64,000 bases of DNA from sequence record MG752970.1. One strand, given 5' to 3'. The notes beneath the pieces are model-generated. The model saw nothing but the letters and a program-made list of their open reading frames with translations, did no database searches and was not told where the DNA came from. This document shows, piece after piece, positions 49,997 through 50,070 of the stretch (positions are counted from its first letter, which is position 1; each line of letters opens with the position of its first letter). Position numbers and translations under genes: made by a program.

Positions 49997-50070
49997 TCGA
50001 AGGGAACTGGCGACACAGTGCTTTTGTTTTCGCCAAATGAAAGAAGTAACTGTATCTATCACCACTTCGA
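49997..50070 (-). ncRNA. Second, minimal Y-RNA-like element lacking the tRNA-like domain
   Basis: Shares an identical 25-nt block with the YrlA copy (49964-49988 = 50042-50066); ends pair TCGAAG/CTTCGA and GATACAGT/ACTGTGTC; same CAGTTCCCT 3' motif. Confidence 0.65.

What the first reader, a model, noticed from the sequence alone, without database searches (positions are those of the whole stretch)
49997..50070. Second, minimal 74-nt Y-RNA-like element with an identical 25-nt block
It keeps the putative Ro60-binding helix and the CAGUUCCCU motif but replaces the tRNA-like module with a short U-rich/A-rich loop. It ends 5 nt upstream of YrlA. A shared adaptor with a swapped effector domain suggests two different Ro60 RNPs, or a competitor that regulates the first.
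Basis: partly seen in the sequence, partly recalled or inferred. Interest (0 to 1): 0.65.

Follow-up and report, generated by a model that had tools for sequence, protein, structure and literature searches.

The report
Module-less second Y RNA of jumbo phage
The 74-base element is very likely a real small RNA gene of Ralstonia phage RsoM2USA: a stripped-down "Y RNA" that keeps the stem expected to bind the phage's Ro60 protein but lacks the tRNA-like part. That makes it a new example of a known class (like bacterial YrlB/Yrn2), not a new kind of RNA.

Summary
The window is Ralstonia jumbo phage RsoM2USA (MG752970.1, nt 1-64000). On the minus strand, 50070-49997 is a 74-nt hairpin. It shares a 25-nt identical 5' block and a 20-nt 3' block (90%) with the tRNA-like YrlA-type RNA 4 nt downstream (49992-49862).

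Both sit in a tRNA cluster, 4.9 kb upstream of, and co-oriented with, the phage's only Ro60 (TROVE+vWA) gene.

A covariance model built only from module-less elements of other Ro60-encoding phages finds exactly two hits in the 343.8 kb genome. One is this element (41.6 bits). The other is a diverged copy at genome 75506-75429, which also lies just 5' of a YrlA-type RNA.

Across 46 elements from 16 phage Ro60 loci plus this window, the stem covaries strongly (score 0.656 against 0.221 shuffled). Soil-metagenome relatives show no change in the element, while flanking genes differ by 10-14%.

Two or more Y RNAs per Ro60, one of them a simple hairpin, is already described for Deinococcus, Salmonella and Mycobacterium. 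Two Ro60-binding Y RNA-like molecules were also shown for Thermus phage phiLo. So this is a new member of a known kind.

Ro60 binding, discrete processing, and the proposed role (competitor/gate or alternative adaptor) remain untested, because no RNA data exist.

An earlier scan note had already found the second YrlA at 75.2 kb.

The parts
49997..50070 (-). Module-less Y RNA ('min1', 74 nt). Terminal helix 50070-50065 / 50002-49997; bulged U 50064; GG/CC pairs 50063-50062 / 50004-50003; internal loop UGAUA (50061-50057) / GCCAGUU (50011-50005); helix 2 50056-50049 / 50019-50012; 29-nt loop 50048-50020.
   Evidence: Repeats. CM R1 51.6 bits. Independent CM R2 41.6 bits, E 6.7e-10. Folds closed in cis in the dicistronic context. 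0 differences in metagenome relatives.
49862..49992 (-). YrlA-type Y RNA ('YrlA1', about 131 nt): same lower stem plus a tRNA-like module (T-arm, stem-loop, D-arm).
   Evidence: Rfam YrlA partial match 18.5 bits over T-arm/stem-loop/D-arm. CM R1 41.5 bits with a 70-nt insertion. MFE fold.
50072..50147 (-). Low-scoring tRNA-Gly(UCC) immediately 5' of min1 (1-nt gap). Probable processing handle that defines the min1 5' end.
   Evidence: ARAGORN. Rfam tRNA 31.5 bits against a cut-off of 29.
50292..50365 (-). Canonical tRNA-Gly(UCC), first gene of the RNA cluster.
   Evidence: 64.3 bits.
49722..49798 (-). tRNA-Pro(UGG), 3' neighbour of YrlA1. In soil relatives the 59-nt spacer 49801-49859 is deleted, so YrlA1 abuts it.
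   Evidence: joint 49800>49860 in runs X1 and X5.
43612..45078 (-). Phage Ro60 homologue (ORF57, 488 aa; TROVE + Ro60-type vWA). It is the only one in the genome and the presumed protein partner.
   Evidence: PF05731 search of the whole record. Pfam TROVE 32.4 bits and vWA_Ro60. Closest solved structures are Thermus phage phiLo Ro60 9KOP/9L5Y, E 3.4e-20. 42-48% identical homologues in other phages.

Best explanation
The element is a functional, module-less Y RNA of phage RsoM2USA, analogous to bacterial YrlB/Yrn2 and to phage phiLo Yrl2.

Inferred biogenesis: it is transcribed on the minus strand as part of a polycistronic cluster, tRNA-Gly, tRNA-Gly', min1, YrlA1, tRNA-Pro. It is then freed by the tRNA-processing nucleases that cut its neighbours.

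Shown structure: its paired 5'/3' ends form the family scaffold. This is a terminal helix, a bulged U, a GG/CC pair, an asymmetric internal loop with GGUGAUAG on the 5' strand (a variant of the GNCGAAN0-1G / GGUCCGA Ro60 motif) and GUUCC on the 3' strand, and a freely covarying second helix.

Inferred function: this scaffold binds the phage Ro60 (ORF57). The RNA lacks the tRNA-like module that in YrlA/Yrn1 RNPs tethers Ro60 to PNPase. It would therefore occupy Ro60 without tethering it, acting as a gate or competitor that sets how much Ro60 is in the nuclease-coupled form. Alternatively it presents its UUACUUC...A-rich loop to a different partner.

My estimates: about 0.75 that it binds Ro60 as a discrete RNA. 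Given that, roughly 55:45 for gate/competitor against alternative adaptor.
For: (1) Ro60 gene on the same strand 4.9 kb downstream, and the only one in the genome.
(2) Model R2, built only from module-less elements of other phages, finds exactly two hits in 343.8 kb: this element (41.6 bits, E 6.7e-10) and a second copy at genome 75506-75429 (46.1 bits).
(3) That second copy also lies just after a weak tRNA-like sequence and 5' of a YrlA-type RNA, so the pairing min + YrlA occurs twice.
(4) Relative to YrlA1, the terminal helix changed on both strands (UUGAG/CUCAA to UCGAAG/CUUCGA). The helix-2 A>G change keeps a U-G pair.
(5) The scaffold covaries across 46 elements from 16 phage Ro60 loci plus this window: 85.9% paired, 16 of 17 pairs with double changes, score 0.656 against 0.221 shuffled (0/500) and at most 0.144 when slid.
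(6) Specificity: 46 hits in 247 kb of Ro60 loci plus this window, against 2 weak hits (at most 18.7 bits) in 206 kb of non-Ro60 viral contigs.
(7) A 17-base RNA motif search of IMG/VR recovered 9 distinct contigs that carry a Ro60 gene beside the match.
(8) Module-less copies of 62-78 nt occur in at least 9 other phage contigs/genomes.
(9) A soil-metagenome contig shows 0 differences over 49901-50070, against 7 differences in the next 234 nt and 10-14% in flanking CDS.
(10) Precedent: every characterised bacterial system has at least 2 Y RNAs, one of them a simple hairpin; Yrn2 is co-transcribed with a tRNA and Yrn1 (PMC4201824). In phage phiLo, Yrl1 and Yrl2 both bind its Ro60 (PMC12135203).
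Against: There is no RNA evidence at all: no RNA runs hold the phage. No binding data exist.

The unconstrained MFE of min1 is not the scaffold fold. An alternative hairpin (UUGGCGA/UCGCCAG, -19.4 kcal/mol) beats the scaffold (-18.1), and the helix-2 pair probability is only about 0.2-0.25.

The 25-nt identity with its neighbour includes helix 2, which the family does not constrain in sequence. This points to recent duplication or gene conversion, so part of the 'conservation' is simply youth.

The 5' motif deviates from the published GNCGAAN0-1G at two positions.

The Ro60 gene is 4.9 kb away with several genes between, farther than in most phage loci examined.

The A2 covariation alignment was fitted to the model.

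The metagenome relatives share variants and are not independent of each other.
Confidence: 0.75

Rival explanations
1. It is a non-functional duplication remnant: a recent partial tandem copy of YrlA1 that lost the tRNA-like module and is decaying.
For: The 25-nt perfect identity with the neighbour includes the family-variable helix 2. The MFE prefers a non-scaffold fold. The adjacent tRNA-Gly also looks like a degraded tandem duplicate (31.5 bits).
Against: The terminal helix differs from YrlA1 on both strands yet stays perfectly paired (6 bp). There are no differences in diverged environmental relatives. The independent model R2 recognises it at 41.6 bits. A second, diverged module-less copy sits at the same relative position in another cluster. 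The same class is found in at least 9 other Ro60 phages.
Confidence: 0.1
2. It is a structured spacer of the polycistronic precursor (a processing or folding aid for the flanking tRNA-Gly' and YrlA1). It is degraded after processing and is not an independent RNP component.
For: Gaps of only 1 nt and 4 nt to its neighbours. No promoter or terminator of its own. No expression data.
Against: It keeps the whole Ro60-type scaffold, including the internal-loop motifs, which a spacer would not need. In several phages the module-less copy lies directly beside the Ro60 gene without any tRNA next to it (L021, L004, L040). Analogous D. radiodurans Yrn2 is cut from a tRNA-Yrn precursor and accumulates bound to Rsr (PMC4201824).
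Confidence: 0.1
3. It is a cis-acting signal (terminator or attenuator) or part of a protein-coding gene.
For: A 116-codon ORF (49818-50168, + strand) spans it.
Against: No U-tract or terminator call. The ORF has no Pfam match, is not annotated in GenBank, and runs antisense through a tRNA and two structured RNAs.
Confidence: 0.02

Closest known systems
Bacterial second Y RNAs: S. Typhimurium YrlB, M. smegmatis YrlB, D. radiodurans Yrn2 (Chen et al. 2013/2014; PMC4201824)
   Same: A second, smaller Ro60-associated RNA encoded next to a tRNA-like Y RNA. [quoted passage not shown] Yrn2 is made from one precursor with a tRNA and Yrn1, the same gene order as here (tRNA, small Y, tRNA-like Y).
   Different: No detectable sequence homology could be tested, because YrlB is conserved only within Salmonella according to the paper. 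M. smegmatis YrlB still has a possible T-arm and this one has none. This one is phage-encoded, lies 4.9 kb from Ro60, and is present in two diverged copies.
Thermus phage phiLo Yrl1/Yrl2 with phiRo60 (PMC12135203; PDB 9KOP, 9L5Y)
   Same: A phage-encoded Ro60 with two Y RNA-like genes upstream, one more compact than the other, and both bind the phage Ro60 in vitro. RsoM2USA ORF57's best solved-structure match is this protein (E 3.4e-20).
   Different: The phiLo RNAs were defined by a CGAA motif. Here the equivalent motif is GGUGAUAG. RsoM2USA has four scaffold RNAs in two tRNA-embedded clusters. Nothing has been tested biochemically here.
Rfam YrlA (RF02553)
   Same: The neighbour YrlA1 has the YrlA module order. 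The UUACUUC and A-rich strands of min1 correspond to the single-stranded AUGCUU / AaAcUuG positions of the Rfam consensus.
   Different: The Rfam model covers only helix 2 and the tRNA-like module, which min1 lacks. There was no hit for min1 even at E<=10. Min1 is therefore not a YrlA.
Metazoan Y RNAs (RF00019)
   Same: The 5'/3' ends pair into a bulged stem that binds Ro60, with a variable, pyrimidine-rich loop as the effector part, and there are several paralogues per genome.
   Different: No sequence match. Different transcription and processing (Pol III against tRNA-cluster processing).

Membership tests
Bacterial/phage Y RNA (Ro60-associated ncRNA, criteria of Chen et al. 2014) | Encoded near a Ro60 orthologue and on the same DNA strand | tested here: met
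   ORF57 (43612-45078, minus) is the only TROVE gene in the 343.8 kb genome. Same strand, 4.9 kb downstream. This is farther than in the other phage loci examined (0.05-1.8 kb).
Bacterial/phage Y RNA (Ro60-associated ncRNA, criteria of Chen et al. 2014) | 5' and 3' ends pair into a stem with an internal loop or bulge that carries the GNCGAAN0-1G-type motif on the 5' strand | tested here: inconclusive
   The stem and internal loop are present and covary. The motif is GGUGAUAG, two deviations from GNCGAANG. Relatives range from an exact GGCGAAG (L016) through GGUGAAG and GGCGUAG to this form.
Bacterial/phage Y RNA (Ro60-associated ncRNA, criteria of Chen et al. 2014) | Physically bound to Ro60 and stabilised by it | not testable with these tools
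   Needs a pull-down or EMSA with ORF57 protein.
Bacterial/phage Y RNA (Ro60-associated ncRNA, criteria of Chen et al. 2014) | Accumulates as a discrete small RNA | not testable with these tools
   No RNA run holds this phage. Only DNA contigs of relatives were available.
Rfam YrlA (RF02553) | tRNA-like module (T-arm, acceptor/anticodon-like stem-loop, D-arm) between the stem strands | tested here: not met
   No YrlA or tRNA hit over 49997-50070 at E<=10. The loop is 29 nt with no T- or D-arm.
Module-less phage Y-scaffold RNAs (class defined here, model R2) | Full-length match to a covariance model built from module-less elements of other Ro60 phages (terminal helix, bulged U, GG/CC, internal loop, helix 2, UUACUUC...A-rich loop) | tested here: met
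   R2 excludes all RsoM2USA sequences. It scores 41.6 bits, E 6.7e-10, model positions 1-67 of 67. Only two hits in the whole genome.
YrlB/Yrn2-type second Y RNA | [quoted passage not shown] | tested here: met
   4 nt upstream of YrlA1. The family-consistent fold is a hairpin whose loop begins UUACUUCUUUCAUUU.

The most novel reading that the evidence does not exclude
Module-less Y RNAs may be a conserved, widespread phage class (Ralstonia, Xanthomonas, Microcystis, crAss-like and many uncultured phages). Its near-invariant UUACUUC...AAAA loop would itself be an effector surface. It could act as a dedicated 'gate-only' regulator that titrates phage Ro60 away from the PNPase-tethering YrlA forms. 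Or it could be an adaptor to a different host factor that binds U-rich/A-rich RNA. On this view phages run a set of interchangeable adaptor RNAs (2 to about 8 per Ro60) on one constant scaffold, and the distinct terminal helices keep tandem copies from mispairing.
Probability: 0.3. Interest if true: 0.6.

Novelty: new member of a known kind. Interest (0 to 1): 0.4.

Why it matters
It adds unannotated RNA genes to a published jumbo-phage genome. The phage has four Y-type RNAs for one Ro60, whereas the paper (PMC8504454) lists only the TROVE ORF. It also shows that the pairing 'hairpin Y RNA + tRNA-like Y RNA' recurs in phages. The role of second Y RNAs (YrlB/Yrn2) is still open. Phage loci with natural series of module-swapped RNAs on one scaffold, and a compact Ro60 with a close solved relative, offer a tractable system to test whether the module-less forms gate, compete or recruit. 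The practical lesson is that the Rfam YrlA model cannot see this class, so it is systematically missed in annotation.

Tried and rejected
- Rfam at gathering and at E<=10 gave nothing on the element.
- An exact 18-mer scan of IMG/VR returned one chance match inside a coding region (L005).
- The degenerate motif scan returned 34 loci, about the number expected by chance. Only about a third were real Y RNAs (11-12 loci, 9 of them distinct contigs with Ro60 beside the match). The rest served as negative controls.
- My first descriptor script gave about 12 false positives among 50 hits (3 in shuffles), so I moved to covariance models.
- R1 missed YrlA2 because of its long insertion (9.3 bits with filters off). 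It was found by motif instead.
- The promoter/terminator scan was uninformative.
- Overlapping ORFs have no family match.
- There are no RNA-seq runs.
- The read laying variant table was truncated, so the positions of the X7 and some X1 differences in the Y region are unknown. I claim zero differences only for the X6 and X5 contigs.
- The Chen 2014 supplements and the 2020 Annual Review (PMC10870794) are not held.
- Rhizobium and Vibrio phage Ro60 loci gave only partial upper-stem hits, so the lower-stem scaffold is not universal.
- Host Ro60 status could not be checked, because no genome handle is available for this window.

Full report
**What the window is.** BLAST identifies the window as nt 1-64000 of Ralstonia phage RsoM2USA (MG752970.1, 343,806 bp). 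GenBank annotates only hypothetical CDS around the finding and nothing between 49690 and 50399. The genome paper lists 44 tRNAs and a TROVE-domain ORF57, but no Y RNA (PMC8504454).

**The observation.** All relevant genes are on the minus strand. In transcription order they are:
- tRNA-Gly(UCC) 50365-50292
- a low-scoring second tRNA-Gly(UCC) 50147-50072 (31.5 bits)
- the 74-nt element 50070-49997
- a 4-nt spacer
- a 131-nt RNA 49992-49862 with T-arm, stem-loop and D-arm
- tRNA-Pro 49798-49722

The repeat finder confirms a 28-nt repeat at 96% (25 nt identical) forming the 5' arms, and a 20-nt repeat at 90% forming the 3' arms with CAGUUCCCU. Each block occurs exactly twice in the whole genome. 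The only corrections are the strand and the spacer length.

**The protein partner.** A search of the whole record with Pfam TROVE finds one gene, ORF57 (43612-45078, minus). It carries TROVE plus a Ro60-type vWA domain. Its best solved relatives are Thermus phage phiLo Ro60, alone and bound to its Y RNA-like Yrl2 (9KOP, 9L5Y; E 3.4e-20). Homologues at 42-48% identity occur in many phages.

**Anatomy.** The family-consistent fold of the element has these parts:
- a 6-bp terminal helix (UCGAAG/CUUCGA)
- a bulged U
- two G-C pairs
- an asymmetric internal loop (UGAUA / GCCAGUU)
- an 8-bp helix 2 (GAUACAGU/ACUGUGUC)
- a 29-nt loop that begins UUACUUC and ends in an A-rich run

Compared with its neighbour, the terminal helix is changed on both strands (UUGAG/CUCAA in YrlA1). 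The one helix-2 difference keeps a U-G pair. In the 211-nt dicistronic context each element closes on itself.

One caveat applies. For the isolated 74-mer, ViennaRNA prefers an alternative inner hairpin (UUGGCGA/UCGCCAG). It scores -19.4 against -18.1 kcal/mol for the scaffold, and helix-2 pair probability is about 0.2-0.25. Of 12 comparable module-less elements elsewhere, most fold into the scaffold as their MFE.

**Comparative evidence.** Unannotated gaps beside Ro60 genes hold tandem arrays of RNAs that share this scaffold. The shared parts are a 5' GUGG(U/C)G..AG, a variable helix, then UUACUUC, and a 3' (U/G)UUCC(C) followed by the terminal helix. This holds for Xanthomonas phage Tenjo, Caulobacter phage CcrColossus, Brevundimonas phage Kabachok, Microcystis phage Mvi-JY20 and an IMG/VR contig. 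Some copies carry T-arms and give sub-threshold Rfam YrlA hits. Others have short hairpins or nothing.

A 17-base RNA motif scan of IMG/VR gave 34 loci, roughly the chance expectation. In 9 distinct contigs a Ro60 gene lay beside the match.

I built model R1 from nine module-less elements:
- It found 46 elements in 247 kb of Ro60 loci plus this window.
- It found only two weak hits (at most 18.7 bits) in 206 kb of non-Ro60 viral contigs.
- On the resulting alignment, 85.9% of cells pair, 16 of 17 pairs show double changes, and the covariation score is 0.656. Shuffles give 0.221 (0/500) and slid controls at most 0.144. The alignment is model-fitted, so these figures lean towards the structure.
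- Of the 46, 22 have a T-arm, 12 are 80 nt or shorter without one, and 12 are intermediate. 44 carry the UACUUC-like motif.
- A crAss-like phage (cr106_1) also has a 74-nt module-less copy right after its TROVE gene.

**Independence test.** The element was in the R1 seed, so I built R2 from nine module-less elements of other phages only. Over the complete RsoM2USA genome, R2 gives exactly two hits at E<=1: the element (41.6 bits, E 6.7e-10) and a second one at genome 75506-75429 (46.1 bits).

**A second cluster.** An earlier scan note (s1-412461) pointed to a YrlA-type RNA near 75.2 kb. I fetched the rest of the genome and found the order there to be: a weak tRNA-like sequence, the 78-nt module-less RNA (min2), about 85 nt of spacer, a YrlA-type RNA (genome about 75344-75201), then tRNA-Gly(GCC). 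This parallels the first cluster.

A motif scan shows exactly four scaffold elements in the genome. Min2 has different helices. It has also turned the otherwise near-invariant GG/CC pair into AG/CU, a compensatory change. Min2 and YrlA2 differ in helix 2, whereas min1 and YrlA1 are identical there.

**Population evidence.** No RNA run holds the phage. Contigs of soil and plant metagenomes do hold relatives:
- One contig (run X6) spans 49901-50304 with five substitutions and two indels, all between 50100 and 50259. None fall in 49901-50070, which covers the whole element and the 5' half of YrlA1.
- A contig from run X5 spanning 49944-50094 is identical.
- In the same runs, flanking coding sequence differs by 10-14% in run X6 and about 6% in run X1.
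- In two runs the 59-nt spacer between YrlA1 and tRNA-Pro is deleted.
- These relatives share variants, so they count as roughly one observation. If 7 changes fell uniformly over the 404 nt, the chance of none landing in the 170 nt is about 0.02.

**Comparison with the literature.** Chen et al. 2014 (PMC4201824) found YrlA-like RNAs near Ro60 in 254 bacteria and 22 phages. [quoted passage not shown] They showed that Yrn2 is made from one precursor with tRNA-Asp and Yrn1. They proposed that the extra Y RNAs let Ro60 form other RNPs.

A 2025 paper showed that phage phiLo encodes two Y RNA-like molecules upstream of its Ro60. Both bind it, with different stoichiometries, and both form complexes with host PNPase (PMC12135203).

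The Rfam YrlA model spans only helix 2 and the tRNA-like module. This explains why module-less RNAs are invisible to it.

**Verdict.** The element is very probably a genuine module-less Y RNA, so it is a new member of a known kind.
- Shown: the sequence relationship, membership of a covarying Ro60-linked scaffold family, duplication of the min+YrlA unit, and conservation in relatives.
- Inferred: polycistronic transcription and release by tRNA-processing enzymes, binding to ORF57, and the functional consequence of lacking the tether module (gate/competitor against alternative adaptor).

The main rivals, a decaying duplicate or a mere precursor spacer, get about 0.1 each.

Noticed in passing
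Genome 75201-75506 (L054:11402-11707, minus), outside the window: Second Y RNA cluster of the phage: a 78-nt module-less Y RNA (75506-75429) preceded by a sub-threshold tRNA-like sequence (Rfam tRNA 28.5 bits), and a YrlA-type RNA (about 75344-75201) abutting tRNA-Gly(GCC). The phage therefore has four Y-type RNAs for one Ro60.
   Followed up: yes
L018:4750-5950 (Caulobacter phage CcrColossus), L019:5280-5874 (Xanthomonas phage Tenjo), L047:8190-8770, L035:5300-6131: Tandem arrays of 4 to about 8 scaffold-sharing Y RNA-like genes directly upstream of phage Ro60 genes. The modules vary: tRNA-like, small GNRA-type hairpins, or none. I found no paper describing arrays of this size.
   Followed up: partly
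window 50020-50048 with 50005-50011 (minus strand): An A>C difference from YrlA1 in the 3' internal-loop strand (GACAG to GCCAG) creates complementarity to UGGCGA in the loop. This gives an alternative hairpin slightly more stable than the Ro60-type fold, so it could be a conformational switch or it could be chance. It is unchanged in the metagenome relatives.
   Followed up: partly
window 50072-50147 and 50292-50365 (minus): Two tRNA-Gly(UCC) genes 220 nt apart. The downstream copy is degenerate (31.5 against 64.3 bits) and abuts the small Y RNA. It may survive mainly as a processing handle.
   Followed up: no
window 55744-55821 (minus); CDS RsoM2USA_79 55743-55958 (+) and RsoM2USA_58 45234-45437 (+): An amber-suppressor tRNA(CUA), called 'Pyl' by ARAGORN and noted as a suppressor in the genome paper. 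Two annotated hypothetical CDS lie antisense over tRNA genes (tRNA-CUA and tRNA-Thr 45292-45367) and are probably spurious.
   Followed up: no
window 49801-49859: The 59-nt spacer between YrlA1 and tRNA-Pro is cleanly deleted in relatives from two soil metagenome studies, which puts the YrlA1 3' end directly against tRNA-Pro.
   Followed up: partly
L054:11553-11575 (minus; genome about 75352-75374): An isolated T-arm-like hairpin (GUAGGUUCGAAUCCUAC) sits between min2 and YrlA2. It may be a remnant of another tRNA or Y RNA module.
   Followed up: no
L017:9767-10022 (Brevundimonas phage Kabachok); L069:1380-1683 (crAss-like cr106_1): Phage-encoded tmRNAs lie within a few kb of the Ro60 gene (permuted tmRNA 57.1 bits in Kabachok; annotated SsrA in cr106_1). 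This hints at clustering of RNA quality-control genes.
   Followed up: no
window 48004-48465 (minus): A Phage_30_3 / NADAR-domain protein (151 bits) lies between the Ro60 gene and the Y RNA cluster.
   Followed up: no
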